In this document: in pieces, positions 10,778 through 63,551 of the stretch
Layout of the letters: the number at the start of each line of letters is the position of its first letter
Position numbering within the stretch: the stretch's first letter is position 1
The notes under the pieces: model-generated
The model's input: only the letters and a program-made list of their open reading frames with translations
Database searches by the model: none
Told to the model about the DNA's origin: nothing
Virus record (IMG/VR): IMGVR_UViG_3300045961_000282
Span: 124,001-188,000 of that record
Strand: one strand, 5' to 3'
Length of the DNA stretch: 64,000 nt
Program-made: the position numbers and the translations under genes

Positions 10778-10820
10778 CCGCTTCCAAGGGGGGGTGTCTG
10801 CTGTGACCCAAGAATTCCTC

Positions 10821-47601: not shown

Positions 47602-47685
47602 GGGGGAGGGGCCGGTTTGACAAAGGCCGGCCCCAACCCTCATACTTGAACTACTACCGAACACCACCACTAGGAGGAACCCAGA

Positions 47686-48213
47686 ATGACCGAGAACACC
47701 ACCACCACCCCCGCCGTCGCTGACGCCCTTGTCGCCGCGGCCACCGCCCCCACGACCCCCGTGGTCGTCCCCACCGCCCTGTCGCCCGAGGCGCAGGCGT
47801 ACCTCGACGCGATCAACGCGCCGGGCGTGAACGTCCTGCACGTCGCGTGGGTGTCGCCCGAGAAGAAGGTCGCTGCCGCGTTCCGTGGGCACGTCCTGAC
47901 CAAGGAGTCCACCGCGACGGTCATGACCGGCGTGGAGTACCAGAGCCTGTCGGTCAACAACGACCGCGAAACGGGGGAACTCCCGTGGGGCGAGTGGGTG
48001 CCCGAGCACTACCCGTACCTGATCCAGCACAAGGGATCGTTCTACGCCCGGCTCTACACGGTGGACGGCACGATCCGCACCACCTACAAGATCGACGGGC
48101 GGATCGTGAAGCGCGAGGACTACCTCGCCATGCTGGTGCCCAGCGCCCGCGAGCCCAAGCGCCCGAACGGCGGGTGCATCACGGTTCACGTTGAGGGCTT
48201 GACCGTTTTGTAG
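47686..48213 (+). CDS. hypothetical protein
   Basis: Hairpin promoter, RBS; GELPWGEW..YPYLI.HKG..Y.R. Confidence 0.7.
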   Translation: MTENTTTTPAVADALVAAATAPTTPVVVPTALSPEAQAYLDAINAPGVNVLHVAWVSPEKKVAAAFRGHVLTKESTATVMTGVEYQSLSVNNDRETGELPWGEWVPEHYPYLIQHKGSFYARLYTVDGTIRTTYKIDGRIVKREDYLAMLVPSAREPKRPNGGCITVHVEGLTVL

Positions 48214-48299
48214 CGGGATGGCACGGGGGGCCGATTGCCACGGCGTCGGCCCCCCGTGCTATGATTCACCCATCACCACCACCACGAAGGAGAATGACC

Positions 48300-48647
48300 A
48301 TGGGAAACACAACCACGCAAGGACTGGCCGAGGCTGTGGCCGAGGGCATCGCGTCGCGGCGACAGGCCCTGACGGCCCACGTCACGACCGGCTTCTTTCC
48401 ACCGCTTCCCCGCGAGTACGTCGCCGTGGCCGAGGCCGTGCTCGACGCGCTGGAGGACGCCGGGGTCGTTGAGGACGACGACTTGGGATGGGACGTGATC
48501 GACCCGAGCGTCTGGCAGCGCGATATCGACCTGCCCGCGCTGAACCCGATGCCGCGCGAGGCGCGCGTCTACGACGACGGCACGGGCACCGCCACGGTCG
48601 CCGCCCTGTTCCGCGCCCTGCGGCTGGAGTACCTCGTCGGCGTCTGA
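48300..48647 (+). CDS. hypothetical protein
   Basis: Hairpin promoter, A/C leader, RBS. Confidence 0.65.
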   Translation: MGNTTTQGLAEAVAEGIASRRQALTAHVTTGFFPPLPREYVAVAEAVLDALEDAGVVEDDDLGWDVIDPSVWQRDIDLPALNPMPREARVYDDGTGTATVAALFRALRLEYLVGV

Positions 48648-48701
48648 CCGGCCCAAGGAACGCCCTCACCACGGTGGGGGCGTTTCTGCATGTCTGGACC
48701 C

Positions 48702-48992
48702 ATGACGGCCACTAGCCTGCCGCCTATGGACACCCCCAACGTCGTCAAAACCGTTGTCGCCGCCGTCATGGCCGCGGGCGGCGCCTTCCTGCTGGCATGG
48801 GAGGACGGCGTGATTGAGCCGTCCGAGTGGAGCACGATCCTGCTGGCGGGCTTCTCTGTGCTCACGGGCGGCGCCGCGCTAGCCGAACGATCCCGCGCCG
48901 AGAACGCCGAGGGCGAGGTGCTGCGCCTACGGATGCGCGAGGTGGCAGACTCGCCCATGCCCGAGGACACCGAGACGAAGGAAGCCCAATGA
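48702..48992 (+). CDS. two-TM holin-like membrane protein
   Basis: Two TM helices joined by DGVIEPSEW, resembling actinophage holin-like proteins; no endolysin nearby. Confidence 0.4.
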   Translation: MTATSLPPMDTPNVVKTVVAAVMAAGGAFLLAWEDGVIEPSEWSTILLAGFSVLTGGAALAERSRAENAEGEVLRLRMREVADSPMPEDTETKEAQ

Positions 48993-49336
48993 CCGACGAC
49001 ACGACGACCACTGAGGCCCCCGAGGCCCCCGCAGGCGACTCCTTCGAGGTGTCCATGCGCGCCGGAGACGACACGCGCACCGTCGCCTTCGCGGGGCGTG
49101 CGCTGTTCCGCGACGTGCGCCTGACGTGGGTGGCCGAGGTGCGTTCCGATGGCATCGCCATCCACCCGACCTATGACGGCGAGGCCCCCGAGGGCGCCGA
49201 GGCGCTGCTCGACGGCATGGCCGACATTCTGGGCCGCACCGTGGCGCAGGCCAACGCAAGCGCCGCCAACGCCTACCGGGCCGCCATCACCGAGTCGCTG
49301 GGCGAACTCACGGTGCAGCGGGCGCTGTTCCTGTGA
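48989..49336 (+). CDS. hypothetical protein
   Basis: ATGA overlap. Confidence 0.6.
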   Translation: MTDDTTTTEAPEAPAGDSFEVSMRAGDDTRTVAFAGRALFRDVRLTWVAEVRSDGIAIHPTYDGEAPEGAEALLDGMADILGRTVAQANASAANAYRAAITESLGELTVQRALFL

Positions 49337-49632
49337 GCCGCTCCATGCTGCTTGCCATGCTGATCGGCGCGCTTCTGGCCGTCACGGTCTCCATCGTGCT
49401 GGTGCGCGTCCTCGCGTAACGCGCGCGCGACCGGCGGCCCTCGAGGGTCCCGAGGATTTGGGGATCCCTAAACTCGACGAGTTCGAGGCTTCGTATGGTT
49501 CGCGCCGAGTTGTGTCATGCCCTCGATGCACACTGGTGGAACAACAGAACAGCGGGACGGTCGATTGGACTTGCATCACCCCATCCCGTAAACTAGTTGC
49601 TACAACAACCACCACAACAGAAAGGCGCTGAC

Positions 49633-49920
49633 ATGAACGAGCCGACCATCACCGGAGTCATCTCCGAGGGCACCCTGCGCAACTCCGACCTGATCCCGGC
49701 GTTCGCCCGTGTGCTGGCCACACTGGACCCCAACCACCCGAGCGGGCCGGAGTTCGTGGTCCAGATCGAGAAGATCGCCCGCACGGCGGCGTGGGACTCC
49801 GAGGAGGCTGACTTCCTCCTCGCTGACCTGCAGGACGGAATCGCCGAGGCGATGCCCGAGGGCTGGCACTTCGGTACCCACGAGGGCGACGGGGCGTGCT
49901 TCGGGATCTTTCAGGACTGA
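49633..49920 (+). CDS. conserved phage hypothetical protein
   Basis: GTLR..DLIPAF and FGTHEGDGA.FG motifs. Confidence 0.7.
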   Translation: MNEPTITGVISEGTLRNSDLIPAFARVLATLDPNHPSGPEFVVQIEKIARTAAWDSEEADFLLADLQDGIAEAMPEGWHFGTHEGDGACFGIFQD

Positions 49921-50009
49921 TCCCCACCACAGCGGGCCGATCTGACAAGGGTCGGCCCGCTGTGGTATGCTTGATCCACAACAACCACCACTACCGAAAG
50001 GAATCACTC

Positions 50010-50270
50010 ATGCAGTTCACTGACACCTACTTCGAGGGGCGCATCGGCACCACGCTCGTCATCTTCGACTCGATCTACGAGGTCGAGTTCGACATCTCCA
50101 CGGGTGACGTGGAAGGCCTGCGCTTGCAGGGGGAGTCCGTCGACTTCGACCACGCCCTGCTCGCCATCCTGTCCGAGACGGTCGACTTCGAGCGGATCGG
50201 CGACCGGCTGATCGACGCACTGGAAGCAGCCAAGGCCGATATCGAGGCCGCGCTCAACGAGGGCGACTGA
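50010..50270 (+). CDS. acidic hypothetical protein
   Basis: Hairpin promoter, leader, RBS. Confidence 0.65.
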   Translation: MQFTDTYFEGRIGTTLVIFDSIYEVEFDISTGDVEGLRLQGESVDFDHALLAILSETVDFERIGDRLIDALEAAKADIEAALNEGD

Positions 50271-50272
50271 CC

Positions 50273-50635
50273 ATGCTCAACACTCCGAGCGACCGCGCCA
50301 TCGCGGCCAACGCGATGCTGCACTGCGCCCTGTGGTCATCCACGGACGAGGACAGTGAGCCGCTGGATGCGTCCTACGACCCGCGCGACATCGCGCCCGC
50401 CACGGTGGCGGCGCTGACGGGCGACCTGTTCGACTTCATCGACGCCGAGATTGCCGACCTGATCGACCTTGACGCCAGTCAGGTCGGCCATGACTTCTGG
50501 CTCACGCGGAACCACCACGGAGCCGGATTCTGGGACCGTGGACTGGGCGAGGTCGGCAAGCGCCTGACCACGGCCGCGCAGGCGTTCGGCGAGGTCACCC
50601 TCTACATCGGCGACGACGGCTGGATCTACGCCTGA
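50273..50635 (+). CDS. conserved phage hypothetical protein
   Basis: GHDFWLTRNHHGAGFWDR motif. Confidence 0.75.
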   Translation: MLNTPSDRAIAANAMLHCALWSSTDEDSEPLDASYDPRDIAPATVAALTGDLFDFIDAEIADLIDLDASQVGHDFWLTRNHHGAGFWDRGLGEVGKRLTTAAQAFGEVTLYIGDDGWIYA

Positions 50636-50700
50636 CTTGACGAAACTCGGGCTGACAAGGTAAGGTTGTACCAACACCACAACGACGAAAGGAAACAACA

Positions 50701-51033
50701 GTGATTCTTCCCGAGATCAACAAGAGGCGCCGCGGCCATCGGTTCTACCCGATCTGGACCGACGAGGTGCCCGCCCTACGCAGCACCGAGGGTCAGGATG
50801 ACCCGATGGTCCGCGCCCACTACTTCGTGGGCTCGTGGGACTGGTACGTCGTCGAGTGGGACCCCGAGACGGGCGAGGCGTTCGGCTTCGTCAAGGGCCT
50901 CGATGAGGAACTGGGCTACTTCTCGCTGGTCGAGATGGAGGCCACCCTCGCCCGCGGCCTGTTCCCCATCGAGCGTGACCTCTACTGGGACCCGGTGCCG
51001 CTGAGCACCATCACCCGAACGGTGCGTGCCTGA
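50701..51033 (+). CDS. DUF2958-like protein
   Basis: WDWYVVE.DP....FG.V.G...ELGYFSL.E. Confidence 0.75.
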   Translation: MILPEINKRRRGHRFYPIWTDEVPALRSTEGQDDPMVRAHYFVGSWDWYVVEWDPETGEAFGFVKGLDEELGYFSLVEMEATLARGLFPIERDLYWDPVPLSTITRTVRA

Positions 51034-51090
51034 CCCCACGCGCAAAGGCCCCCCGCATCCGACATGGGATGCGGGGGGCCTTTGCCGTGC

Positions 51091-51258
51091 CTAACCCTTG
51101 GGCAGGATGCGGGTCATCTTCGTGCCGCACGCCGGACAGGTCCCCTTGGCCAAGCGAGTGGTCCGGTTGCCCTTCACCGACAACTCGATGGCACCCGTGA
51201 ACTCCCGCTTCGCCTTGCACTTCACGCAGTAGGCCTCGCCTGTGTAGGTGTCGCTCAT
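51091..51258 (-). CDS. DUF5679-like zinc-ribbon protein
   Basis: AYCVKCKAKRE...KGTCPACGTKM.RI. Confidence 0.75.
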   Translation of the reverse strand: MSDTYTGEAYCVKCKAKREFTGAIELSVKGNRTTRLAKGTCPACGTKMTRILPKG

Positions 51259-51413
51259 CAGCATCTCCTTCGTGTGTGCGTGCACACTACACGCGCGCGC
51301 GACCGGCTCGAGCCGCCGCCGGAGCCTCACCAGACCTCGATTGGGTGGGTGTCCTAGCGGCGTGCTATGCTTTGCAGGCAACAACCACCAACACAACCTG
51401 AAAGGAGAACAAC

Positions 51414-51605
51414 ATGACTCGACTTCCCGCAGGAGGAGAAACTCCCGCAGAGCGCATCGCCGTCCTTGAGGAGTTCATGGCGCTGGAGGAGCAGATTGCT
51501 CCCGCCGCGGACCCTGCCGCTCGCATGGAGGCGCTGCTGCTACTCGATGCCATGTCCGGGGGACTACCCCGGCACCCCAATGCCGCTGGCCCCCTGAACG
51601 TCTGA
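51414..51605 (+). CDS. 63-aa hypothetical protein
   Basis: Promoter, A/C leader, RBS. Confidence 0.6.
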   Translation: MTRLPAGGETPAERIAVLEEFMALEEQIAPAADPAARMEALLLLDAMSGGLPRHPNAAGPLNV

Positions 51606-51703
51606 GAGCACGACGCAGCGGATTTGCAAGATTTCGCTGCGTCGTGCTAGTGTTATTCCATAACCACCTAGCAACACCACCACCACCTGAAAGGATCACC
51701 ACC

Positions 51704-54226
51704 ATGACCACTGCTGCTGACCGCGCCAAGGCGCTCGCCGCGAAGTACGCCGCCACCACGAGTGAGCGCCAGCATGACCAGAACTTCATCCGCGACTTCG
51801 TGGGCGTGTTCACCGACCGCGACCCCGCGGACATCTTCCGGTTCCAGTACCCCGTCGAGACCCCGCGCGGCACGACTGGCGCGATCGACGCCCTGTGGGA
51901 GAGCCACATCCTGTTCGAGATGAAGTCGGCGGGCAAGGACCTGCACGCAACCCTCAAGGATCAGGTGCGCCCCTACGTCGCCCATCTGGCCCCGGCGAAG
52001 CACCCGCAGATGTACATCATCAGCGACTTCCAGAACTTCCTCGTCGTGGACCCCGACGGCACCAAGCACGAGTTCCCACTGGCGGACCTGCACGCCCACG
52101 TGTCCCTGTTCACCCCGATCTTCGACGGCCTCCCGGCCTACCTGCGCAGCCACGGCACCGTGAACGAGCAGGCGGCATCGCTGCTGAGCGCGGTCCTCAA
52201 GGGCCTGCGGAAGAACGGCTACTCCGAGACGGACCTGCCCGCGCTGGCCACCCGGTTGCTGTTCGCCCTGTACGCCGACGACAACTACGTCTGGAAGAAC
52301 GGCACGTTCCACGGCGACGTGCTGGGCACCCCGGCTGACGGGGCCACCCTTGGCCGTGTGATCGACGGCATCTTCCGACTGCTCGACAGCCCGAACGCCG
52401 ACGCAACAGACTACTGCTACATCAACGGCAGCATGTTCGCCGGGGACATCGCGGTGCCCGTGTTCGACGCGGATACCCGTGAGGCGCTGCTGGAGGCCTG
52501 CGAGTACGACTGGCGCGGCTTGGACCCGATGATCTTCGGGACGATCTACCAGTCAGCGATGGACGCCGACGAGCGCCACGCGGAGGGCGCGCACTACACC
52601 CACGAGCAGGACATCCTCGACGTGCTGGGTCCGGCGTTCCTCGACAACCTGAAGGCGCAGTATGCCGCCGCACAGGGGAGCGCGACCAAGTTGCGCAACT
52701 TCCTCAAGCGCCTGTCGGAGATCGAGGTCCTCGACCCGTCGTGTGGATCGGGCAACTTCCTCATGGTGGCCTACCGCGAGTTGCGCGCGCTGGAGACCGC
52801 CGCGTCGCTCGACCTCGCGGCGGGCGGCGCCAAGACGATCCCGGCGCAGCGCGTGTCACTGGCGCAGTTCCACGGCATCGAGTACAACGCCCTGTCGGCA
52901 TCGGTGGCCCGCACGAGCCTGTGGCTCACGCTGCACGCCGCCGATCAGCGGCACACCGAGGCAATGGGCGAGTTGATGTGGGACACGTTCCCGCTCAAGG
53001 ACGTGGCCGACATCCGGCACGCGAACGCGGTCACGACCGACTGGAACGCCGAGTTCCCGAACCTGACGGCCATCGTCGGCAACCCGCCGTACATCAGCGC
53101 GAAGAAGGAGCGCGACGGCGGACAGAATGCCCAGCAGGTCGCGGAACGCAAGGCGCTGGGCATCAAGGGCGGGATGATGGACTACGCCCACATCTGGATG
53201 GTCAAGTCTGCGCAGTACATCGCCGAGTTCCCCGATACCCGGTCAGGTCTCGTGGTGACGGATTCCGTCGCACAGGGCACGCAGGCATCGGGCCTGTGGT
53301 CACACCCGGCCATGCAGGACGTGTACCCGATCTTCGGGCGGCAGTCCTACGTCTGGCCCGGCGATGCATCGGTGCGCGTGGTGAACTACGGCCTTGGCTC
53401 CAAGCCTGAGGCAGTCGAGTTGCGCGCCGAGGATCGCAGCATGATCCCGGCTGCCTACCTGACCCCCTACCTCACGCCGACCGACATCCCCTCGCGGGCC
53501 ACGGCCAACGTGTCGCGCACGGCCCCGGCGTGGATGGTGAACCTGAAGAACGGTACTTCGTATGCCGACTTCGGCCACTACGCCAAGTTGGGCGACGACC
53601 TCGCGGTCATCCAGCGCGACCATCCCGAGATGCTGGTGAACAAGGTGTCATCCTCGAACCTGCTGTCAGGCAAGGATGATCCGGTGCTGTGGTTCGGAAA
53701 CCGAACCTCGAAGGCTGTGGCTCACAAGGCCATCGCGCCACGGCGCGAGGCTGTGCGGATCAAGCGTGGCGCCGGGCACCCGAAGGGACCGGAGTGGGTT
53801 CCGTCGTCCGTGGTCACCGGGACGTTCATGGTGGTGCCCGCGACGTTCAGCAAGAGTTACGAGCGCACGCCCGTCGTGATCCTGTCGGGCACGAACTACA
53901 TGACCCAGAAGGTCTACTACGCCCCGGTGGATTGGTTCATGGCCGGGCTGGTCATGTCCAAGCGCGCGATGGACGCCCAGATCGCAGGCGGCAGCAAGAT
54001 GGGCAAGGGCGGCGACGTTCAGTACGGCACCGGCTACCTGTACGGGATGCCTGCCCCGACCAACGACACCCCCGAGTTGCGGGCCAAGATCGCGGCCAAG
54101 GCACAGGAGTGCATCGCCGCCCGGCCCGGCCCGGCAGCCGAGTGCATGAAGGTCACCAACATGCCCGAGTCGCTGGCGAAGTTGCACCGCGAGTTGGACG
54201 CGCTGGTCGATGAGTGGTGGGGCTGA
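51704..54226 (+). CDS. MmeI-like type IIL restriction-modification enzyme (endonuclease-m6A methyltransferase fusion)
   Basis: IDALWESHILFEMKSAGKDL (PD-ExK), YINGSMF, DPMIFG, GAHYT, LDPSCGSGNFL, GIE, IVGNPPY. Confidence 0.88.
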   Translation: MTTAADRAKALAAKYAATTSERQHDQNFIRDFVGVFTDRDPADIFRFQYPVETPRGTTGAIDALWESHILFEMKSAGKDLHATLKDQVRPYVAHLAPAKHPQMYIISDFQNFLVVDPDGTKHEFPLADLHAHVSLFTPIFDGLPAYLRSHGTVNEQAASLLSAVLKGLRKNGYSETDLPALATRLLFALYADDNYVWKNGTFHGDVLGTPADGATLGRVIDGIFRLLDSPNADATDYCYINGSMFAGDIAVPVFDADTREALLEACEYDWRGLDPMIFGTIYQSAMDADERHAEGAHYTHEQDILDVLGPAFLDNLKAQYAAAQGSATKLRNFLKRLSEIEVLDPSCGSGNFLMVAYRELRALETAASLDLAAGGAKTIPAQRVSLAQFHGIEYNALSASVARTSLWLTLHAADQRHTEAMGELMWDTFPLKDVADIRHANAVTTDWNAEFPNLTAIVGNPPYISAKKERDGGQNAQQVAERKALGIKGGMMDYAHIWMVKSAQYIAEFPDTRSGLVVTDSVAQGTQASGLWSHPAMQDVYPIFGRQSYVWPGDASVRVVNYGLGSKPEAVELRAEDRSMIPAAYLTPYLTPTDIPSRATANVSRTAPAWMVNLKNGTSYADFGHYAKLGDDLAVIQRDHPEMLVNKVSSSNLLSGKDDPVLWFGNRTSKAVAHKAIAPRREAVRIKRGAGHPKGPEWVPSSVVTGTFMVVPATFSKSYERTPVVILSGTNYMTQKVYYAPVDWFMAGLVMSKRAMDAQIAGGSKMGKGGDVQYGTGYLYGMPAPTNDTPELRAKIAAKAQECIAARPGPAAECMKVTNMPESLAKLHRELDALVDEWWG

Positions 54227-54497
54227 CCTACCCCACGCCCCCGAAACCCCCCGGTTCCCCTGTGGAGCCGGGGGGTTTTGCGTGCTCGCCTCACGCGTAC
54301 GCGCGCGCGACCGGCAACCCTCGAGCGTTGATCGAGACTCCTCGAGACTCCTCCGGGAGGCCGTATGGTTCGCCGCCGGTGTTTGTGTCAGACCCCTGCC
54401 GCACACTGCCTGCACCAAACAGGATTTGGCGCAGGCAGGAAACTGCTGCTATGCTTGACCCACAACAGCACGACCACCACTACCGAAAGGACACACC

Positions 54498-54893
54498 ATG
54501 ACCACACATGCCGTTGCCCTCCCCGATGCGACCCTCGACCGGATCGCCGACGACCGCTCGATTGCCTACCGCTGGGAGCGCCCCGACGTTGACGTGCCCG
54601 ACAAGATGGACGACCACGGCGTCCGGTACGCGGAGTTGTACGTCTACCACTCCAAGCACAGCAAGGAGTACGTCGCGATGCTGCACATCATCGACGTGTT
54701 CCCGGGGTGGATCCAGTCGCACATCTCCCCGCGCCACGGCATCACGATCCTCAAGCGCCCCGTTGCGCGTCACAGCGCCAAGGCGCTGCAGCAGCACGCC
54801 AACGAGGCCATGCAGGTGATGATCGACCACATGGACGACAGCCGCGTGGCGACCCTGTTCAGCGGCCACCCGCTGCCGGACTCCCGCGCCTGA
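54498..54893 (+). CDS. hypothetical protein
   Basis: A/C leader and RBS. Confidence 0.65.
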   Translation: MTTHAVALPDATLDRIADDRSIAYRWERPDVDVPDKMDDHGVRYAELYVYHSKHSKEYVAMLHIIDVFPGWIQSHISPRHGITILKRPVARHSAKALQQHANEAMQVMIDHMDDSRVATLFSGHPLPDSRA

Positions 54894-54977
54894 TCCCACC
54901 ACGGAGGGCCGATTCGACAAGGGTCGGCTCCCCGTGGTAAGGTTCTACCAACACCACAACGACGAAAGGACACCGAC

Positions 54978-55304
54978 ATGAGCACGACGATCATCACGTT
55001 CGGCCCCGACCAGCGCCCCGAGCCCGGCGCCTACTTCGTGATTCGCGGCTGCGACCACGAGGCCGCCCGTGCCATCGCGTTCGCCCTGTTCGGCCCCGAG
55101 TTCTGCACGTCCTACGACGGCGACTCCGAGCGCGGGGCGAACATCCTCGACAACCCCGAGCGCACCATGATCGGCGGCGTCGAGGTTCACCTGCCCCCGA
55201 CCGGCGACCTGCCCGGCGAGTCCTCGCCGCTCATCGACGCCATGCGCCGCGGCGAGGCCCTGTTCATCGACGAGGCTGTCCTGACTGACGGGGACGACCA
55301 GTGA
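54978..55304 (+). CDS. hypothetical protein
   Basis: Hairpin promoter, leader, RBS. Confidence 0.65.
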   Translation: MSTTIITFGPDQRPEPGAYFVIRGCDHEAARAIAFALFGPEFCTSYDGDSERGANILDNPERTMIGGVEVHLPPTGDLPGESSPLIDAMRRGEALFIDEAVLTDGDDQ

Positions 55305-55867
55305 CCCGCCGCCTGAGCGAGTTCGCCAGCAACGGCGCCAACCGCTCGTGGAAGGTCGAGGACGACGGGCGGACCACGACGGTCACCCTGTGGACCATCG
55401 CGCTGCACGAGCCGACGTGTCGGTTCGCCAAGACCAACAGCCGCGGCGGGCCGTATCAGGTCCACGACTACCTGCCCAACTACGGGCAGGACAACCTGAA
55501 CTGGCTCAAGGTGCGCGGCGTGGACGGCCCGGCAGCCAGCGACCGCACCGTCGCGTGGACCGGCTGCAAGGTGTGCGGCACCGCCTCCATTCCCCGCGCT
55601 GAGTGGGGGGCGATGGTCGACGTCATGCGCGACGAGTGGGCCGAGGCCGACCGCCGCGAGCGGCTCGAGTACGCGGCCAAGCGAGCCGTCGAGGATGCCC
55701 GCGACGCCCGCAACCGCTACATCGCTGAGGCCGAGGCCGATGCCTACGACGCGGAGTTCCGCGACACAGTGGAGGCCCGCATGGCCGTGGTCCGTGCTGC
55801 CGCCCGCGCCAAGTGGGAGGCCGACAACGCCGAACTGGCGATGCTGCTGGGGGGCGACCATGCGTGA
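55301..55867 (+). CDS. hypothetical protein (Cys/His motifs, coiled-coil tail)
   Basis: GTGA overlap. Confidence 0.6.
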   Translation: MTRRLSEFASNGANRSWKVEDDGRTTTVTLWTIALHEPTCRFAKTNSRGGPYQVHDYLPNYGQDNLNWLKVRGVDGPAASDRTVAWTGCKVCGTASIPRAEWGAMVDVMRDEWAEADRRERLEYAAKRAVEDARDARNRYIAEAEADAYDAEFRDTVEARMAVVRAAARAKWEADNAELAMLLGGDHA

Positions 55868-56060
55868 GCGCCCCGGCCCGTCGTGGCCGTCGTTCTCCTT
55901 CGGCCTGCTGGTGCTGGTCGCCCTGCTCGTCACGGCGATGTACCGCGCTGAGCAGCGGCACCTGACCGAGACCCGCGACATGTGTCTGGCCGCAGCGGAC
56001 ACCGAGTACCAGAAGGACTCGTGCATCCGCGAGTACGAGATCAACTCCGGCTGGTTCTGA
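55860..56060 (+). CDS. small membrane protein
   Basis: TM helix; overlaps the previous stop. Confidence 0.55.
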   Translation: MRERPGPSWPSFSFGLLVLVALLVTAMYRAEQRHLTETRDMCLAAADTEYQKDSCIREYEINSGWF

Positions 56061-56118
56061 GTCCCGACGGGGATTTGACAGAACCGACGGGGAGCGCATA
56101 TGCTTTTACTAGAAGCGG

Positions 56119-56190
56119 ATCCGAGAGCGCAGGTTGAGCCGGACGGTCTCCAAAACCGTCTTCGTGAGAGTTCGAATCTCTCCTCGGGTG
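56119..56190 (+). tRNA. trnW: tRNA-Trp(CCA), short atypical D-arm, no encoded CCA
   Basis: Acceptor ATCCGAG/CTCGGGT, G73, anticodon arm ACGGT-CTCCAAA-ACCGT, T-arm GAGAG-TTCGAAT-CTCTC; TTGACA/TATGCT promoter. Confidence 0.8.
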
Positions 56191-56325
56191 CTGGCGCGAG
56201 TCAGGCGCGGAATCGGCAGCGAATGAGTCTGCAACGGCGCTGAAAGCCGAGAAAAGGGTCCCCTCGACCGCAGACCGGGGGGACCTGCCTGACACCACCA
56301 TCACCATCACGACGAAAGGAGCGAC

Positions 56326-56529
56326 ATGATGAAGGTCACGCACGGGATCCCCGTGCTCAACGGCAGGATCGAACTGAGCATCGACGAGTTCGACGGCACG
56401 CCGATCATCAAGATCCGCAGCGATGAGGACTGCTGCGACGACCAGACCATCCTGCACCTGAACGACAGTCAGGCTCGAATCCTGCTGGCGAGCCTGCGGA
56501 TGGCGCTGCGCGACCTGAAGGAGGGCTGA
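56326..56529 (+). CDS. hypothetical protein
   Basis: Leader and RBS. Confidence 0.6.
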   Translation: MMKVTHGIPVLNGRIELSIDEFDGTPIIKIRSDEDCCDDQTILHLNDSQARILLASLRMALRDLKEG

Positions 56530-56532
56530 GCA

Positions 56533-57141
56533 GTGGGTCAGTATTGGACCCCTGTGCTGAGTTCCGCCGCGTCCGCCGCCGACTTCACCGAGCGCATCGA
56601 CGGCTGGGCCTACTCCCACGACTGGAAGAACGGCCTCAAACTCATGGAGCACTCATGGGTCGGCAACAAGTTCGTGGACGCCATCGTGCGCGATCTGGTG
56701 TCCCGCCCGCGGCGCCTCGTGTGGGCGGGCGACTACGCAGACCCTGAGCCGGGCGTGCTCGTCAACGGAGATCTCGCGACCCTGTACCACTACGTCTACG
56801 AGACGGTGCACCTCGCGCCGTACCAGATCAAGCCCGCCGACCACGACAGGGTCTACCCGGCGCGCTATCTGGTCAATCACGACCTGAAGGTGTTCGTGGA
56901 CATGAAGAACCTGCCCGAGGACCGCGAGGGCTGGCAGATCCACCCGCTGCCGCTGCTGACCGCCGAAGGCAACGGGCGCGGCGGCGGCGACTTCGGCGGT
57001 CATGGCGGGCGGCACTCCAAGGATGCGGTCGGCTCATGGGCGCGCCACGAGATCAGCGTGCTCCCTGCGTCATCGTGGAAGCGCTTCGAGAGCCTGAAGC
57101 GCATGGGGTACGCCGAGGTCGTCCCCGAGTTCATGGAGTAA
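56533..57141 (+). CDS. conserved phage hypothetical protein
   Basis: MGQY, GLKLMEHSWVGN.FV, VWAGDYAD, HPLPLLTAEGNGRGGGD. Confidence 0.75.
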   Translation: MGQYWTPVLSSAASAADFTERIDGWAYSHDWKNGLKLMEHSWVGNKFVDAIVRDLVSRPRRLVWAGDYADPEPGVLVNGDLATLYHYVYETVHLAPYQIKPADHDRVYPARYLVNHDLKVFVDMKNLPEDREGWQIHPLPLLTAEGNGRGGGDFGGHGGRHSKDAVGSWARHEISVLPASSWKRFESLKRMGYAEVVPEFME

Positions 57142-57357
57142 TCCCCCGAACAAGAACCCCCGGCGTGCCCCTCGCGTCGGGGGTTCTTCGTGTGTACGCG
57201 CGCGCGACCGGCGGCTCGAGGTGAGGCTATGACTTTCTCGAGCCTCCTCCGGTGGGCCGTATGGTTCGCCCCGTTCCCTCGATTTGTTACGTTCCGAATC
57301 CACGTGCTATGCTTGGGGCAACACCGCACCACCACCACTACGACGAAAGGACTTCTC

Positions 57358-57666
57358 ATGGCACTCACCACCCTGCACACCGAGTACGGTCGGATGGACC
57401 AGTCGCTCGTGATGACCACCGTGGCCCGCCGCTCGGACGACAAGCGCTTCCGCGTGCGGATCAGGCGCAACGCCTACGACCACCAGAGCCACGCCATCGC
57501 TGAGGTCTGGACGGCCAACGGCTGGACCGAGGTCACCCGGCGGCTGGACTTCGCCTCCCTGAAGGTGGCGGAGTTCTCCTACGTCCACAAGGGCGAGACG
57601 TGGCACTACGCCGCAGACACCGACGCCCGCGCCCTCATGAAACTCGCGATGGAGTTGGTCCCGTGA
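57358..57666 (+). CDS. hypothetical protein
   Basis: Leader and RBS; NAYD.QS.A.AEVW. Confidence 0.7.
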   Translation: MALTTLHTEYGRMDQSLVMTTVARRSDDKRFRVRIRRNAYDHQSHAIAEVWTANGWTEVTRRLDFASLKVAEFSYVHKGETWHYAADTDARALMKLAMELVP

Positions 57667-57890
57667 CGCCCGATGAACTGTTGCAGCGGATCAACTACCC
57701 CCTGCTGCGCCAGCAGCGGGCCACCCTGAGCCAGATCATCGACGTCCTCGACGAGGCCGACCAGAACCCCGCAGCGATGGAGGCGGCGGTCAACCTGACC
57801 GGCCTGCGCTCCCTGATCTACGCGATCATGGACGTGGCCGACGACGCGGGCTACATGCCCGAGGACGACGATTTGGCGGACTCCGCATAG
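57663..57890 (+). CDS. hypothetical protein
   Basis: GTGA overlap. Confidence 0.6.
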   Translation: MTPDELLQRINYPLLRQQRATLSQIIDVLDEADQNPAAMEAAVNLTGLRSLIYAIMDVADDAGYMPEDDDLADSA

Positions 57891-57939
57891 CCGTGCTATG
57901 CTTCTGCTACCACCACAACAACGACGAAAGGAAGCGACT

Positions 57940-58383
57940 ATGACCTTCACGATCAAGAATGTCCGCGACACGGCGGGCGGGGCGTACTCGTTCTCGCTCT
58001 ACGAGGACGGCGAGCGCGTCGCCGTCATCACCAACGACGGGCGCGGCGGGCCTGACAACATCGAGCCCGTCCTGACCGAGGGCAAGGTCTGGCGCGATGA
58101 GGTCGCCCGCTTGGAGGCCACGCTGACCGCGTGGGCCGAGGCCGTCGTGCCCGAGTGGTACCTGACCGACCACGGCAACTACCCGCGCCTGACCCCCAGT
58201 TGGGAGTTGGCTCTGGGCTACCTGAGCGAGTCGGCGGAGTACGACCGCATGGCCCGCACCGCCGGGCCGGGGCGCTACCTGCTCCGCCTGCCCGACGGGC
58301 GCATGGGCTACGGCCTGCCCAACCACCCCAGCAACCGCGCTGCGCTGCGCTGGGAGGCAGGGGATTGGATTCCCGCCGCCTGA
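57940..58383 (+). CDS. hypothetical protein
   Basis: Leader and RBS; NDGRGG motif. Confidence 0.7.
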   Translation: MTFTIKNVRDTAGGAYSFSLYEDGERVAVITNDGRGGPDNIEPVLTEGKVWRDEVARLEATLTAWAEAVVPEWYLTDHGNYPRLTPSWELALGYLSESAEYDRMARTAGPGRYLLRLPDGRMGYGLPNHPSNRAALRWEAGDWIPAA

Positions 58384-58475
58384 CCATCGTGACCCCCGTC
58401 GGGTTGATTTGACAGATTGATCCGACGGGGATTGTGATTCCATCACCACCACAACAACGACAGAAAGGAACCGAC

Positions 58476-58940
58476 ATGCTGAACCCCATCGTGCTCGACG
58501 AGGCCGCGCTGCGTGCCCGCTTCGAGCAGACCGACGACTACGACGGCTTCTCGGAGTTCGACCCGATCAACTCGGGGGAGTTCGACTCCATGCTGGTCGC
58601 CATCATGACCGCGGTCAACGAGGCGCTGCCGGTGACCAACGCCGACCGGGCAGGCACCCGCCAGCACCCGTGGAGCAACTCGCTCGACCCGGTGCTGCCC
58701 ACCGAGAGCATCGACGTGTGCCTGATCGCTGACCTCGACGGCACGGTCGCTGGGTACATGTGGACCTACGACCTGTACGGCGCGCGACGCCTGTCGCTGG
58801 CCACCGGCTTCACGGAGTGGAAGAACATGCAACCCGAGGGCGAGGGCATCGACGCCTGCGTCGAGATCGCGAAGATCGTGATCGGCCACGTCAACCGCGC
58901 CATCGCCGACTTCACCGAGTTCGTCGGGGGTGCCAAGTGA
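58476..58940 (+). CDS. hypothetical protein
   Basis: Hairpin promoter, leader, RBS. Confidence 0.65.
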   Translation: MLNPIVLDEAALRARFEQTDDYDGFSEFDPINSGEFDSMLVAIMTAVNEALPVTNADRAGTRQHPWSNSLDPVLPTESIDVCLIADLDGTVAGYMWTYDLYGARRLSLATGFTEWKNMQPEGEGIDACVEIAKIVIGHVNRAIADFTEFVGGAK

Positions 58941-59497
58941 CCGAGATCATCGAGCGCGTGCTCGTGTCCGAGGGCTCGACGCTGACCGTGTGCGACCCCT
59001 GCTACCTGATCGACAGGTCCGATCCGAACGACCGGCTGGTCTACGGCCACACCGAGGCCCTGCCCGACCACGGACCGTTCGCCCTGTCGGCGATCACCGA
59101 GGCGCCGCTGCACCCCGGAACGTGGGAGGTCTACGCCCACGAGGCCGTGGAGGGTGGATGGGGACCGCGCATCTGGCACGCCGGGCTGCGTATGGTTCGC
59201 CCCCCGGCGGCGGACGACGCGACGACCACCGAGCAGGGCGTCGATGCGGGGATGGTTGGCTTCTTCGTCAACCGCCCCCGCATGACGTACAACGACACGT
59301 GGACCACCGACGACGGGGCGACCACGCTGGAACTGACCCGTCTGTTCCAGAAGGGTCACACCTTCGCGTGGATCACCGACTCGGGCTACGGCGACGGCGC
59401 CTACCCGGTCACGGCCATCTGGTCGCAGGGCCGGATCATTCAGGTCGAAGCCACCTACATCGGCTTCGACGGGGATGACGATAACGACGGGATTTGA
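58937..59497 (+). CDS. DUF4241-like protein
   Basis: DPCY, GVDAGM.GFF, SGYGDG.YPV. Confidence 0.6.
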   Translation: MTEIIERVLVSEGSTLTVCDPCYLIDRSDPNDRLVYGHTEALPDHGPFALSAITEAPLHPGTWEVYAHEAVEGGWGPRIWHAGLRMVRPPAADDATTTEQGVDAGMVGFFVNRPRMTYNDTWTTDDGATTLELTRLFQKGHTFAWITDSGYGDGAYPVTAIWSQGRIIQVEATYIGFDGDDDNDGI

Positions 59498-59557
59498 CCT
59501 AGATCCGACGGGGATGCTAGGCTTCTACCAACACCACCACAACAGGAAGGAACAGCC

Positions 59558-59827
59558 ATGCAGAAGATCATCTACGGGACCGACACGGGTTCCATCGAGG
59601 CATACGACCAATGCGTCGTGCTGCTCGTCTCCGACGACGCCGCGATGGACGACCTCATGGAGGGGGCCGATCCCGACATGCTGGAGGGCGTCACCGAGCA
59701 GAGCCTCGTGACGTGGGAGGACGTGCGCGACGCGCTCGTCCTCGCCATGCGGGCCGAGGGCATCGACCCCGTGACGCAGGCCAAGGTCGTGCTCACAGTT
59801 CTCGACGCAATCGACAACAACGACTGA
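59558..59827 (+). CDS. acidic hypothetical protein
   Basis: Promoter, leader, RBS. Confidence 0.6.
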   Translation: MQKIIYGTDTGSIEAYDQCVVLLVSDDAAMDDLMEGADPDMLEGVTEQSLVTWEDVRDALVLAMRAEGIDPVTQAKVVLTVLDAIDNND

Positions 59828-59836
59828 GGGGGAACC

Positions 59837-59992
59837 ATGGCGACATACCTTCGTGAGGACGACGGCTCGCTGAGCCTGCTGTCGAGGACCTTCCCCATGG
59901 GCAAGTCCGAGTTCGTCTGCTGCGTCCGCGAGGACGGCACGGTCATCATCGCCGCGCCCGAGGATGTGTTGGAGAAGGAGGACGTGGCATGA
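59837..59992 (+). CDS. 51-aa hypothetical protein
   Basis: RBS; ATGA overlap with the next ORF. Confidence 0.5.
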   Translation: MATYLREDDGSLSLLSRTFPMGKSEFVCCVREDGTVIIAAPEDVLEKEDVA

Positions 59993-60141
59993 GCGACAAG
60001 ATCAAGGTCGAGTACGCGGATGGCACCACGGGCGAGTTGTCCGTGCCGTCCGGTCCGCCGGACCGCAGCGCGTTCGATGCGGTCATGAGCATGTTCGGCG
60101 CGCTCGGCGCGTTCGATGTCATCCGCGAGGAGGAGGAGTGA
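59989..60141 (+). CDS. 50-aa hypothetical protein
   Basis: Overlap chain. Confidence 0.5.
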   Translation: MSDKIKVEYADGTTGELSVPSGPPDRSAFDAVMSMFGALGAFDVIREEEE

Positions 60142-60326
60142 GCGAGTACCGAACCCTTGGGTTCTACCTGCGGCTCGACTTCGCGCCCGACGGCGTGCTG
60201 GCGCGGCTGTTCGACATTGACGACGTGAGCGAGTCCGACCCGCTGGCCGAGGCCACCGGACCCACCGCTGACGCGGCGGTCGCCGAACTGGTCAGCACCA
60301 TCACCTTCGACACCACCGACTTGTAG
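60138..60326 (+). CDS. 62-aa hypothetical protein
   Basis: GTGA overlap. Confidence 0.5.
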   Translation: MSEYRTLGFYLRLDFAPDGVLARLFDIDDVSESDPLAEATGPTADAAVAELVSTITFDTTDL

Positions 60327-60337
60327 AGAGGAACGAC

Positions 60338-60601
60338 ATGACCACCAACGACGACAAGGGGCCGATCAACCTCGTGTGTCCCCGCTGCTCGAGGTTTGTC
60401 CCCAACAACGAGACGCCCGGCGCCTACCCCGGCGCGATGACCCGGTGGGGTGGCCGTCAGATCGAGATCTGCTCGCAGTGCGGGCAGGACGAGGCGATGG
60501 CCCAGTTCACCGTCATCGGCACGAACACCGACCCCATGCTGGTCGTCCACCCGACCAAGGGCGTGCGCCCGTGGGACAACCCGCCCAAGGGGCTGACGTG
60601 A
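60338..60601 (+). CDS. zinc-binding protein
   Basis: CPRC..PGA..R....ICSQCGQDEA. Confidence 0.65.
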   Translation: MTTNDDKGPINLVCPRCSRFVPNNETPGAYPGAMTRWGGRQIEICSQCGQDEAMAQFTVIGTNTDPMLVVHPTKGVRPWDNPPKGLT

Positions 60602-60834
60602 TGCCGTGGACCGTCATCTCCTATGACGACGACACCGGGCAGGTGATGGGCGACTGGGTGATGGCGCAGGACCAGTGGGAGGCGTTCGCCGTCGCGCGAG
60701 GCATGCGCAGCGACGTTCTCACCTTCATCACCTTCGTCGCTGCCGTGCCGGGCCACGTCACGGTCGACCCGCCCACGGAGACGGGCGTCGTCTGCGCCGC
60801 CGTGGACTACCCGGATTGGACAGTACCCGCCTAG
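60601..60834 (+). CDS. hypothetical protein
   Basis: TGATG overlap. Confidence 0.55.
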   Translation: MPWTVISYDDDTGQVMGDWVMAQDQWEAFAVARGMRSDVLTFITFVAAVPGHVTVDPPTETGVVCAAVDYPDWTVPA

Positions 60835-60884
60835 GTGTTATACACTTGGGCTACCAACATCACCACTACGAAAGGAGAACGACG

Positions 60885-61277
60885 ATGCAAGCACGACTCA
60901 TCGACCACGACGTTCGCGCCCTCGCCGAGTTCGAGGGGGTGCGCGTCGAGACGGTGCGTACCTCGCGCGGCTACGACAACGGGTTCGAGGTTGATCGCGT
61001 CGAGGTGCACGCCTTCTGGTGCGCAGCCAACCCGCAGTGGGACGAGCCCGAGGGCTGGTCCGTTCGGGTCAACGTCAAGGGCTGGCCCCTGACGGCCAAG
61101 GGAACCCGCGACAAGCGGGTCAGCGATCGCACGCTCGTCCACGACGTGCCCTCGTGGCCCGAGGTCGTCCACGAGGCCGCCCGCGCTGCCTACGATCTGG
61201 CGCTGAGCCGGGGCATCGCGTGGCGGGAGGTCCTCGGCGACGACGGCCAGCCCGGCACCACCCTGACCCTGCTCTGA
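60885..61277 (+). CDS. hypothetical protein
   Basis: Leader and RBS. Confidence 0.65.
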   Translation: MQARLIDHDVRALAEFEGVRVETVRTSRGYDNGFEVDRVEVHAFWCAANPQWDEPEGWSVRVNVKGWPLTAKGTRDKRVSDRTLVHDVPSWPEVVHEAARAAYDLALSRGIAWREVLGDDGQPGTTLTLL

Positions 61278-61386
61278 CAGCGCAGGGGGCGGATTCGACA
61301 CGGGTCCGCTCCCTGTGCTAGGCTTCTACCAACACAACCACCACCTCTGCTAGAAAAACTGGCAGACCCAAGAAAGGAGCAAGATC

Positions 61387-63409: not shown

Positions 63410-63551
63410 ATATCCCGAAACGTCCGCGCCTCGCGCGGAGCGCGCTTGTGGTGGGCGCGCGAAGGCCCCGAGCCGGGTTGAGTTTTCCTTTCCTCCCCGG
63501 CCTCGGGGCCTTCCCATGTCTCACGCGCCTACGCGCGCGCGACCGGTGTAG

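What the first reader, a model, noticed from the sequence alone, without database searches (positions are those of the whole stretch)
47608..61324. Terminator-promoter fusions: the -35 box is displayed in a hairpin loop
Seen: at 47608, 48221, 49927, 51607, 54899, 58395 and 61278 an 8-16 bp inverted repeat starts within about 12 nt of the previous stop codon. Its loop contains TTGACA, CTGACA, TCGACA, TTGCCA or TTGCAA, and in most copies its right arm runs up to the extended -10 (18-19 nt spacer). A further copy with a weak -10 is at 32933. Arm sequences differ between copies while pairing is kept. Known: T4-like PeSL elements and N4 hairpin promoters link stem-loops to early promoters. Inference: a compact unit that stops one cassette and starts the next, or a supercoiling-dependent cruciform switch.
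Basis: partly seen in the sequence, partly recalled or inferred. Interest (0 to 1): 0.65.

Follow-up and report, generated by a model that had tools for sequence, protein, structure and literature searches.

The report
Overlapped terminator–promoter cassettes in actinophage early genes
In the early-gene region of a 206-kb high-GC phage from freshwater sediment, many genes are followed by a strong RNA hairpin built around the next gene's promoter (-35 box at the hairpin tip, -10 box at its foot). This is a compact stop-and-restart signal of a kind already described in T4-like phages and, recently, in bacteria.

Summary
Eight hairpins in the window and one 4.9 kb beyond it have a TTGACA-like hexamer at the apex. 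The right arm fills the 18-19 nt spacer and ends within 3 nt of a TAnnnT -10, usually TGn-extended. All are on the + strand. Eight of the nine start -1 to +10 nt after a stop codon. Folding energies are -26 to -42 kcal/mol.

A covariance model finds no other strong copy in the 206-kb genome. Chance expectation is about 0.15 per strand.

The promoter class has about 25 members, and most lack a hairpin, so the stem is an add-on and not part of the promoter. Uncultured relatives carry the same units at orthologous sites, with different arms and compensatory changes. The register between hairpin and promoter slides, from side-by-side to full overlap. G·U pairs make the + strand RNA the better fold in 8 of 9 copies.

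Best reading: composite terminator (or attenuator) plus SigA-type early promoter. This matches PeSLs of T4-like phages and the "promoter-coupled terminators" of bacteria, but has no U-tract. The cruciform switch and N4-like readings are not supported.

No RNA data exist, so termination is inferred. I file it as a new variant of a known kind, of moderate interest.

The parts
47601..47646 (+). Unit 1. Hairpin 47601-47641 overlaps the last base of the TAG stop of ORF 47368-47601. -35 TTGACA at 47617-47622; -10 CATACT at 47641-47646. A G-poor leader, an AGGAGG RBS and ATG 47686 follow.
   Evidence: (-33.7 kcal/mol, z -5.1)
48218..48265 (+). Unit 2. Hairpin 48218-48262 starts 4 nt after the stop of ORF 47686-48213. 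-35 TTGCCA at 48235-48240; 19-nt spacer; TGc TATGAT at 48260-48265. Downstream start is ATG 48300.
   Evidence: (-41.7, z -7.0)
49926..49971 (+). Unit 3. Hairpin 49926-49966 starts 5 nt after the TGA of ORF 49633-49920. -35 CTGACA at 49942-49947; TGg TATGCT at 49966-49971. Downstream start is ATG 50010.
   Evidence: (-38.4, z -7.1)
51607..51653 (+). Unit 4. Hairpin 51607-51648 starts 1 nt after the TGA of ORF 51414-51605. -35 TTGCAA at 51624-51629; TGc TAGTGT at 51648-51653. It drives the MmeI-like methyltransferase/restriction gene 51704-54226. The arms are unrelated to those of the other copies.
   Evidence: (-31.4, z -6.9)
54406..54455 (+). Variant unit. Hairpin 54406-54438 has the -35 (TTGGCG, 54426-54431) in its right arm. 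The stem ends 11 nt before TGc TATGCT at 54450-54455. It lies upstream of ORF 54498-54893.
54898..54943 (+). Unit 5. Hairpin 54898-54938 starts 4 nt after the TGA of ORF 54498-54893. -35 TCGACA at 54914-54919; TGg TAAGGT at 54938-54943. Downstream start is ATG 54978.
   Evidence: (-31.3, z -4.3)
58394..58438 (+). Unit 6. Hairpin 58394-58430 starts 10 nt after the TGA of ORF 57898-58383. -35 TTGACA at 58409-58414; -10 TGTGAT at 58433-58438. The simple scan also called it terminator-like. Downstream start is ATG 58476.
   Evidence: (-26.4, z -3.8)
61279..61324 (+). Unit 7. Hairpin 61279-61319 starts 1 nt after the TGA of ORF 60675-61277. -35 TCGACA at 61295-61300; TGc TAGGCT at 61319-61324. It has four G·U pairs, so the + strand RNA folds 11.6 kcal/mol better than the - strand RNA. 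The downstream ORF appears to start at ATC 61384.
   Evidence: (-36.0, z -6.6)
32933..32971 (+). Degenerate or half unit. A strong hairpin with TTGACA in its loop, but with no credible -10, no CA-rich leader or RBS, and no + strand gene ending just upstream. It is the only copy that folds better as - strand RNA.
   Evidence: (-30.8)
50637..50666 (+). Promoter of the same class without a hairpin (TTGACG, 18-nt spacer, TAAGGT). The upstream stop codon abuts the -35. Shown as a control.
   Evidence: -10.3 kcal/mol
56075..56104 (+). Promoter of the same class without an enclosing hairpin (TTGACA, 18-nt spacer, TATGCT). It sits in front of tRNA-Trp at 56119-56191.
59494..59523 (+). Promoter of the same class without a hairpin (TTGACC, 18-nt spacer, TGc TAGGCT). 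The stop codon of the upstream ORF (58988-59497) lies inside the -35.
   Evidence: -7.0 kcal/mol
63861..63890 (+). Promoter of the same class without the long hairpin (TTGACA, 18-nt spacer, TACTCT).
51042..51085 (.). Ordinary two-way terminator for contrast: a 17-bp stem whose base carries the A-run and T-run. No -10 or leader follows it.
54256..54285 (+). Ordinary terminator with a T-run just after the MmeI-like gene. It shows that the phage also uses U-tract terminators.

Best explanation
Each unit is two signals packed into one stretch of about 46 nt.

(1) A host SigA/sigma-70-type early promoter, with a GAT-TTGACA-like -35, an 18-nt spacer and a TGn-TAnnnT extended -10. It starts a short G-poor CA-rich leader with a GAAAGGA ribosome site.

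(2) A GC-rich RNA hairpin of 15-19 pairs, made only when RNA polymerase arrives from the upstream gene. Its left arm is free sequence just after the stop codon. Its tip is the -35 hexamer. Its right arm is the promoter spacer, whose sequence is otherwise free.

The hairpin most likely stops or attenuates the incoming transcript a few bases before the next start site, and stabilises that transcript's 3' end. The A/T-rich -10 region is the only weak-hybrid stretch behind the stem. Polymerase sitting on the overlapping promoter may help by blocking the way.

Shown here: the anatomy, the non-random occurrence, conservation with compensatory change, the strand bias, and the independence of promoter and stem.

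Inferred: that the promoters fire, that the hairpin terminates, and how efficiently.
For: Anatomy and statistics.

Family limits: a covariance model run over the whole 206-kb genome gives nine hits of 37-69 bits. All are on the + strand, within a 36-kb stretch holding the densest run of + strand promoters of this class. The next hit scores 26.7 bits.

The stem is an add-on: the same promoter, leader and RBS occur about 25 times. Region energies fall into two groups, -26 to -41 kcal/mol against -7 to -15.

RNA-level function on the + strand: there are 21 G·U pairs against one A·C mismatch, and the + strand RNA is more stable than the - strand RNA in 8 of 9 copies, by 3.7-11.6 kcal/mol.

Conservation: relatives were found through the neighbouring 614-aa vWA/CobT-like protein and carry the same units. 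At the site after that gene, this phage and loci L019, L014, L015 and L016 all have an apex -35 with different arms. L019 shows G-C to A-U and C-G to U·G changes.

Covariation: in 14 model-aligned units, 78.5% of cells are paired, 11 of 14 pairs change on both sides, and the covariation score is 0.362. Shuffled controls give 0.179 (0 of 500 reach the observed value) and slid controls give 0.10-0.17.

Sliding register: hairpin and promoter sit in different registers at orthologous sites. They lie side by side in the distant relative DSL-LC01.

Precedent: PeSLs were shown to terminate and to promote. For promoter-coupled terminators, the -35 coincides with the stem-loop and the coupled promoter raises termination.
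Against: - There are no transcript data of any kind. The only run holding this DNA is the probable source metagenome, and the host is unknown.
- There is no U-tract. The 9 nt behind the stems hold only 2-5 T, while the same genome has ordinary terminators with T-runs.
- A paper title and abstract seen (PMC3993855) state that mycobacterial RNA polymerase needs a U-tract at intrinsic terminators, with NusG helping at weak ones. Termination may therefore be weak or may depend on a factor.
- The TAnnnTT pattern behind the stem is shared by the hairpin-less promoters, so it is not specially adapted for termination.
- Part of the G·U excess comes from conserved promoter-flanking bases at the top of the stem.
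- The covariation counts rest on paralogues and on an alignment fitted to the model.
Confidence: 0.72

Rival explanations
1. The hairpins do not terminate. They act only as 3' stabilisers or processing stops. Long read-through early transcripts are trimmed back by 3'-5' exonucleases to the hairpin, or cut next to it. The overlap with the promoter is then mere space saving.
For: - The hairpins are very stable and there is no U-tract.
- The same genome uses T-run terminators where a hard stop is expected, such as after the MmeI-like gene and at convergent gene ends.
- The + strand bias fits any RNA-level role.
Against: - The stems always end at the A/T-richest spot available.
- In the cultured relative Zooman, the equivalent units do carry a T-run between the stem and the -10.
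- PeSL stem-loops and coupled terminators were shown to terminate.
- Stabiliser and terminator roles do not exclude each other.
Confidence: 0.15
2. DNA-level switch. Under negative supercoiling the inverted repeat extrudes as a cruciform, which turns the promoter off or on by displaying the -35.
For: The repeats are long and nearly perfect, and they sit symmetrically around the -35. Their - strand counterparts also fold stably, at -20 to -36 kcal/mol as RNA.
Against: - The promoter class works with the same consensus without any repeat in most copies.
- The register slides between orthologous sites, down to side by side.
- Imperfections are G·U on the + strand, which are C·A mismatches on the other strand.
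- From general knowledge: sigma region 4 reads a double-stranded -35, GC-rich stems with 5-11 nt centres extrude poorly, and DNA ahead of an incoming polymerase is positively supercoiled.
Confidence: 0.05
3. The inverted repeat is an operator for a dimeric phage or host regulator that overlaps the early promoters.
For: Several copies share an inner CCGAT...GTCGG core. The coupled-terminator preprint reports terminator palindromes that double as transcription-factor sites.
Against: - The arms are unrelated between copies (51624, 58409 and 47617 against 49942) and between orthologous sites, while pairing is kept.
- A protein site would conserve sequence, not complementarity.
- The shared inner core is explained by the conserved promoter flanks.
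Confidence: 0.03
4. The units serve mainly as recombination sites for shuffling ORFan cassettes, as proposed for PeSLs. Transcription signals are a secondary role.
For: The genes around the units are almost all ORFans. The gene directly after the unit that follows the vWA/CobT-like gene differs among relatives: 135 aa here, an extra 173-aa gene in L014, a 191-aa gene in L019, and a DUF1281_C gene in L016 and L017.
Against: - Only one variable junction was examined, and no pair of very close genomes is available.
- The arms differ, so the homology between units is confined to about 40 nt of promoter and leader, which the hairpin-less promoters share as well.
- This role would be additional to the transcription role, not an alternative to it.
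Confidence: 0.05

Closest known systems
PeSLs (promoter-early stem-loops) of T4-like phages (Arbiol et al. 2010, PMC2839356; Comeau et al. 2014, PMC4122927)
   Same: Both are composite intergenic cassettes that begin at the upstream stop codon. They combine a strong sigma-70-type early promoter with a G/C-rich stem-loop that ends upstream transcription. Both are concentrated among small ORFans in the early region. The papers list subclasses in which the stem-loop overlaps the -35 or lies between -35 and -10.
   Different: The phage lineage and host phylum are unrelated: a 65% GC actinophage-like genome against AT-rich T4-like myoviruses. Here there is no AT-rich upstream region. One geometry dominates (apex -35, right arm as the whole spacer), with stems of 15-19 pairs. 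Terminator and promoter activity, recombination and mini-circles were shown for PeSLs but are untested here.
Promoter-coupled terminators of bacteria (Fletcher ... Grainger, bioRxiv 10.64898/2026.08.19.745784)
   Same: Terminator and promoter of tandem genes overlap. The DNA encoding the stem-loop also supplies the -35. The intergenic space is shortened. The proposed interplay is that polymerase bound at the promoter raises termination.
   Different: In bacteria a T-tract sits between the stem and the -10, with termination sites about 10 bp before the start sites. Here the stem runs into the extended -10 with no T-tract, so the predicted gap is only about 4-6 nt. The preprint's main text does not mention phages, Mycobacterium, Streptomyces or Actinobacteria.
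Early region of Actinomycetia phage DSL-LC01 and Microbacterium phage Zooman (distant relatives by large terminase, 52% and 42% identity)
   Same: They share the cassette grammar: stop codon, hairpin, conserved promoter, CA-rich leader, GAAAGGA-type RBS, ATG. Zooman has units with the -35 in the hairpin loop (L011 2618-2699 and 6848-6924).
   Different: In DSL-LC01 the hairpin and promoter lie side by side, and the promoter has a different consensus with no clear -35. Zooman keeps a T-run between the stem and the -10.
Hairpin promoters of phage N4 (recalled from general knowledge, not tested against a paper here)
   Same: A stem-loop is part of an early promoter region.
   Different: N4 hairpins are short, conserved in sequence, extruded in DNA and read by a virion RNA polymerase. 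Here the promoters are plain -35 / extended -10. The stems are long, variable and optional. No virion RNA polymerase was recognised in the 3976-aa giant protein.

Membership tests
PeSL (promoter-early stem-loop) cassettes | Strong sigma-70-like promoter (-35, about 17-nt spacer, -10) repeated in many intergenic regions | tested here: met
   About 25 promoters share the consensus GATTTGAC / 18 nt / TGnTAnnnT.
PeSL (promoter-early stem-loop) cassettes | Stable stem-loop within the same short element, starting near the upstream stop codon | tested here: met
   Energies are -26 to -42 kcal/mol, and the stop-to-stem distance is -1 to +10 nt in 8 of 9 copies.
PeSL (promoter-early stem-loop) cassettes | Enriched in plastic regions full of ORFans, with indels between relatives ending at the elements | tested here: inconclusive
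   ORFan context is confirmed. One junction with variable gene content next to a unit was found. No pair of near-identical genomes is available.
PeSL (promoter-early stem-loop) cassettes | Stem-loop terminates and promoter fires in reporter assays | not testable with these tools
   No RNA runs exist. This needs bench work.
PeSL (promoter-early stem-loop) cassettes | [quoted passage not shown] | tested here: not met
   The upstream flank is the GC-rich left arm. The genome is 65% GC, and its terminase is nearest to actinophages.
Promoter-coupled terminators (Fletcher et al. 2026) | Stem-loop DNA coincides with the -35 of the next tandem gene's promoter | tested here: met
Promoter-coupled terminators (Fletcher et al. 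2026) | Terminator T-tract placed just upstream of the -10 | tested here: not met
   The stem ends within -3 to +2 nt of the -10, so no T-run lies between them. The feature is met in Zooman.
Promoter-coupled terminators (Fletcher et al. 2026) | Mapped RNA 3' end within 35 bp (mode about 10 bp) upstream of a mapped 5' end | not testable with these tools
   No RNA data. The geometry predicts about 4-6 nt.
N4-type hairpin promoters | Short conserved hairpin recognised by a phage virion RNA polymerase | tested here: not met
   The stems are variable and optional. The promoters have -35 and -10 boxes. The giant protein shows only an exonuclease domain.
Canonical intrinsic terminator | GC-rich hairpin followed at once by a 7-9 nt U-rich tract | tested here: not met
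   The hairpin criterion is met. The tail has only 2-5 T in 9 nt, although 4-7 of the 9 are A/T against a 35% background.

The most novel reading that the evidence does not exclude
The full overlap is a working device and not just packing. A hairpin without a U-tract would terminate only because it is fused to a strong promoter. Possible mechanisms are:
- polymerase bound at the promoter acts as a roadblock;
- the released polymerase is handed straight to the promoter it has just reached;
- a ribosome sitting at a stop codon 10 nt or less from the stem masks the left arm, which would couple read-through to translation of the upstream gene.

Early cassettes would then be insulated or chained according to promoter occupancy and translation.
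Probability: 0.15. Interest if true: 0.7.

Novelty: new variant of a known kind. Interest (0 to 1): 0.45.

Why it matters
It extends the idea of fused terminator–promoter signals to an uncultured clade of large high-GC phages. That idea comes from PeSLs in T4-like phages and from promoter-coupled terminators just reported for bacteria.

It also shows the tidiest possible overlap. The sequence-specific -35 sits where a hairpin needs no pairing. The sequence-free spacer supplies one arm. The -10 supplies the only A/T-rich tail.

The clade offers natural compensatory-mutation evidence that both signals are under selection.

It is a test case for an open question: whether Actinobacteria can terminate at hairpins that lack U-tracts.

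The units are also candidate compact insulator parts for high-GC synthetic biology.

Tried and rejected
- DNA similarity search of 47001-55000 against phage records found only one short conserved stretch of about 135 nt (window about 50484-50619, inside a gene) and no relative.
- A 90-nt unit used as query gave only weak hits. One, in Microbacterium phage Rie18, is a similar hairpin without an attached -10.
- A promoter-plus-leader pattern found nothing in viral contigs.
- In metagenome contigs the same kind of pattern gave 120 or more stretches, nearly all chance matches in low-GC DNA. Only L052 (the known contig), L076 (a clear new unit) and possibly L072 were useful.
- Protein-anchored scans of viral contigs with three proteins of this region found no relative or only a 31%-identity relative without the architecture.
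- One relative contig (the P0006 hit) could not be fetched.
- L018 (42% identity) has tightly packed genes at this locus and no units.
- Rfam finds nothing but two tRNAs.
- There are no RNA runs. The only holder is the probable source metagenome, kept as contigs.
- A miniature mobile element was rejected because the arms are not repeated copies.
- Sigma-dependent pausing at the -10 as a substitute for the U-tract was considered and dropped. From general knowledge, such pauses occur about 10 nt too far downstream.
- My crude GC3 gene caller was used only as a guide.

Full report
**Where the window lies.** The window is bases 124001-188000 of a single 206,257-bp contig. The tool labels it a virus record, 99% complete and linear. 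It is 61-69% GC throughout. It encodes a large terminase split by an intein, at window 25588-27276 on the - strand. The nearest terminases are those of Actinomycetia phage DSL-LC01 (52% identity), of about 190-kb Microbacterium phages such as Zooman and A3Wally (about 42%), and of Gordonia phages. The only public run that holds the DNA is a freshwater-sediment metagenome, which is probably its source. No RNA run holds it. The host is therefore unknown, probably an actinobacterium, and nothing about transcription can be observed directly.

**The observation.** Reading the named sites shows the described arrangement at 47617, 48235, 49942, 51624, 54914, 58409 and 61295 (first base of the -35 hexamer).
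- The layout is: stop codon, then a GC-rich inverted repeat with a TTGACA-like hexamer at its centre. The right arm fills the spacer (18 nt, or 19 at 48235) and stops at a TAnnnT -10.
- The -10 is preceded by TGn in five of these seven copies, and also in the extra copy at 68924.
- About 30-50 nt of G-poor, CA-rich leader follow, then a GAAAGGA-type ribosome site and the start codon.
- As RNA the stems have 15-19 pairs and fold at -26.4 to -41.7 kcal/mol. The z-scores are -3.8 to -8.7, and none of 200 shuffles folds as well.
- The first two hexamer bases pair with a conserved GG downstream, so the RNA loop is only 3-6 nt, typically GACAA.
- The stems start -1 to +10 nt after the stop of a long, high-GC3 + strand ORF. 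They end -3 to +2 nt from the -10.

**Is it more than chance?**
- In 20 Markov-1 simulated genomes, a -35-like hexamer enclosed by a stem of score 12 or more occurs 0.15 times per strand (maximum 1). The + strand has 12.
- Eight of the 12 belong to the family. The other four are ordinary terminators with A/T-rich flanks, whose loops fit the loosened hexamer by accident.
- A covariance model built from nine copies was run over the whole genome. It returns exactly those nine at 37-69 bits, all on the + strand, from window 32926 to 4.9 kb beyond the window (L008 5100-5167, or 68924 in window numbering). The next hit scores 26.7 bits.
- The copy at 32933-32971 is a true hairpin but has no credible -10, leader or RBS. 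It does not follow a + strand gene, and it is the only one that folds better as - strand RNA. I treat it as a degenerate half unit.

**The stem is an add-on to a larger promoter class.** The weaker model hits and a simple scan reveal about 25 promoters of one class. All but a few lie on the + strand, between window 21.6 kb and 79 kb. The consensus is GATTTGAC(A/C), 18 nt, TGcTAnGnTT, cTACCAACACCAC..., CGAAAGGA, 5-8 nt, ATG.
- Most of them have no enclosing stem. Region energies fall into two groups, -26 to -41 against -7 to -15 kcal/mol.
- In the hairpin-less ones the upstream stop codon abuts or lies inside the -35. Examples are 50637, 59494 and 64607, and the recurrent TGATTTGAC in relatives.
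- Variants exist. The -35 lies in the right arm at 54406-54438 and at 66989. It lies at the loop/right-arm border after the AAA_5 gene (about 66140). A hairpin sits just upstream of the -35 at 73600.
- The promoter therefore does not need the stem, and stem and promoter can sit in several registers.

**Relatives.** DNA searches and three protein-anchored scans of viral contigs found nothing close. The word search with the 614-aa vWA/CobT-like protein, which two units flank, found metagenomic relatives at 80, 80, 68, 60, 57, 54 and 42% identity. Six of their contigs were fetched.
- These contigs carry the same grammar and the same units. The -35 positions are L016 719, 1237, 1594, 2017 and 11832, L017 12978, L019 2324 and L014 5235, plus the truncated end of L015.
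- One more unit comes from an unrelated metagenome, L076.
- At the orthologous site after the vWA/CobT-like gene, this phage, L019, L014, L015 and L016 all have an apex -35 and a stem reaching the -10, but with different arms. Against L019 there is a G-C to A-U double change and a C-G to U·G change.
- In 14 model-aligned units, 78.5% of cells pair and 11 of 14 pairs show changes on both sides. The covariation score is 0.362, against 0.179 for shuffles (0 of 500 as high) and 0.10-0.17 for slid partners. These counts mix paralogues and orthologues and use a model-fitted alignment, so they are supportive and not a formal test.
- At the site after the AAA_5 gene, the register slides from loop/right arm (here), to right arm (L014, L015), to side by side (L016).
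- In the distant DSL-LC01, every early intergenic region is stop, hairpin, then a differently built conserved promoter, side by side.
- In cultured Microbacterium phage Zooman, some units have the -35 in the loop, with a T-run between the stem and the -10.

**RNA or DNA?** The stems contain 21 G·U pairs and a single A·C mismatch. The + strand RNA is more stable than the - strand RNA in 8 of 9 copies, by 3.7-11.6 kcal/mol. Some G·U pairs involve conserved promoter-flanking bases, but those in the lower stems of 61295, 54914 and 47617 do not. This bias, the position right after stop codons, and pairing conserved over sequence all point to a structure in the transcript coming from the upstream gene. 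They do not point to a protein site or a DNA cruciform.

**Mechanism.** The overlap is the one arrangement in which the two signals do not compete. The only sequence-specific promoter part inside the hairpin (the -35) occupies the tip, where pairing is not needed. The spacer, whose sequence is free, forms the right arm. The free sequence after the stop codon forms the left arm. The -10 region, with 4-7 A/T in 9 nt against a 35% background, is the weakest RNA-DNA hybrid available behind the stem.

I therefore read the units as terminators or attenuators fused to SigA-type early promoters. The predicted 3' ends lie about 4-6 nt before the next start site.

The weak point is the lack of a U-tract. 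The same genome has ordinary T-run terminators. A paper seen (PMC3993855) reports, by title and abstract, that mycobacterial RNA polymerase needs a U-tract and is helped by NusG at weak terminators. The 2026 preprint on promoter-coupled terminators offers a way round this. There the stem-loop DNA also provides the -35, and an active coupled promoter raises termination in vitro and in vivo. That may apply here but is untested. A role purely as a 3' stabiliser or processing stop remains the main rival.

**Comparison with what is known.**
- PeSLs of T4-like phages are the closest functional match. They are composite terminator/promoter cassettes that begin at upstream stop codons among ORFans, with five subclasses by stem position, including overlap with the -35.
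- The genes here are likewise almost all ORFans.
- The gene just after one unit differs among relatives. This hints at PeSL-like shuffling and no more.
- The units differ from PeSLs in lineage, GC content and the absence of an AT-rich upstream region. They differ from the bacterial coupled terminators in lacking the T-tract.
- The N4 analogy fails. The promoters are plain -35/-10, the stems are optional, and the 3976-aa giant protein shows only an exonuclease domain.

**Verdict.** I file this as a new variant of a known kind, of moderate interest. Nothing in the work called for a referred step.

Noticed in passing
window 61351-62118: The ORF behind unit 7 is open and GC3-rich from an in-frame TAG at 61351. 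It has no ATG, GTG or TTG before 61600. A GAAAGGAG ribosome site at 61372 is followed at the usual distance by ATC ATC (61384, 61387). This is probably a non-canonical ATC start, or else a sequencing or assembly error in an ATG.
   Followed up: partly
window 3714-13526: A glycan-synthesis gene cluster sits in a phage. It holds a GlxA/galactose-oxidase-like protein (3714-5624, -), a family-2 glycosyltransferase next to it (5621-6925, -), a UDP-glucose/GDP-mannose dehydrogenase (9533-10777, +), a second GT2 (10928-12265, +) and a protein with a weak, below-cutoff lectin-like (Laminin_G_3) match (12324-13526, +). The GT2-GlxA pair recalls the cslA-glxA pair of Streptomyces (from general knowledge).
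   Followed up: no
window 25588-27276 (-): The large terminase gene carries an intein or Hint insertion between its ATPase and nuclease parts.
   Followed up: no
window 51704-54226 (+): An 840-aa MmeI-like protein has the N-terminal, helicase-spacer and methyltransferase domains. It forms a single-gene cassette between unit 4 and a T-run terminator at 54256. It may serve DNA modification or counter-defence early in infection.
   Followed up: no
window 47653-47685, 48272-48299, 49978-50009 and all other leaders; also L010, L014-L017: The 5' leaders are almost free of G and rich in CCA/CAC repeats. They end in a conserved CGAAAGGA ribosome site. This is conserved as far as DSL-LC01, whose promoter is different. 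They are probably unstructured translation-enhancing leaders in a high-GC genome.
   Followed up: partly
window 56085-56097, 58420-58432, 59505-59517 (approximate): The promoters at 58409 and 59494 share almost the same spacer sequence (CCGACGGGGAT), and 56075 shares its first ten bases (CCGACGGGGA). At 56075 the related sequence CGACGGGGA also occurs as a direct repeat upstream. This suggests that promoters spread by duplication, with the left arm acquired later.
   Followed up: no
window 56119-56191 (+) and 63551-63623 (-): tRNA-Trp (CCA) has its own early-class promoter at 56075. tRNA-Cys (GCA) lies on the other strand.
   Followed up: no
window 42580-43326 (+); also genome 203344-203442 (L142): A Sigma70 region-4-like helix-turn-helix lies in a 248-aa ORF. 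The match scores 26.4 bits, above the cut-off. The relative L018 has two such proteins after its helicase. These may be phage sigma-like factors for later genes.
   Followed up: no
genome 108008-119938 (-), locus L140 109-12039: A 3976-aa giant protein has only one recognisable domain, an RNase_T / DNA-polymerase-type exonuclease at residues about 790-1015. DSL-LC01 and Zooman have comparably large genes near their portal genes.
   Followed up: partly
L008 1296-5105 (window numbering 65096-68905): An AAA_5 ATPase and a 614-aa vWA/CobT-like protein lie two small genes apart. The arrangement is syntenic in all relatives and in DSL-LC01. It served as a good anchor for finding this clade in metagenomes.
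   Followed up: yes
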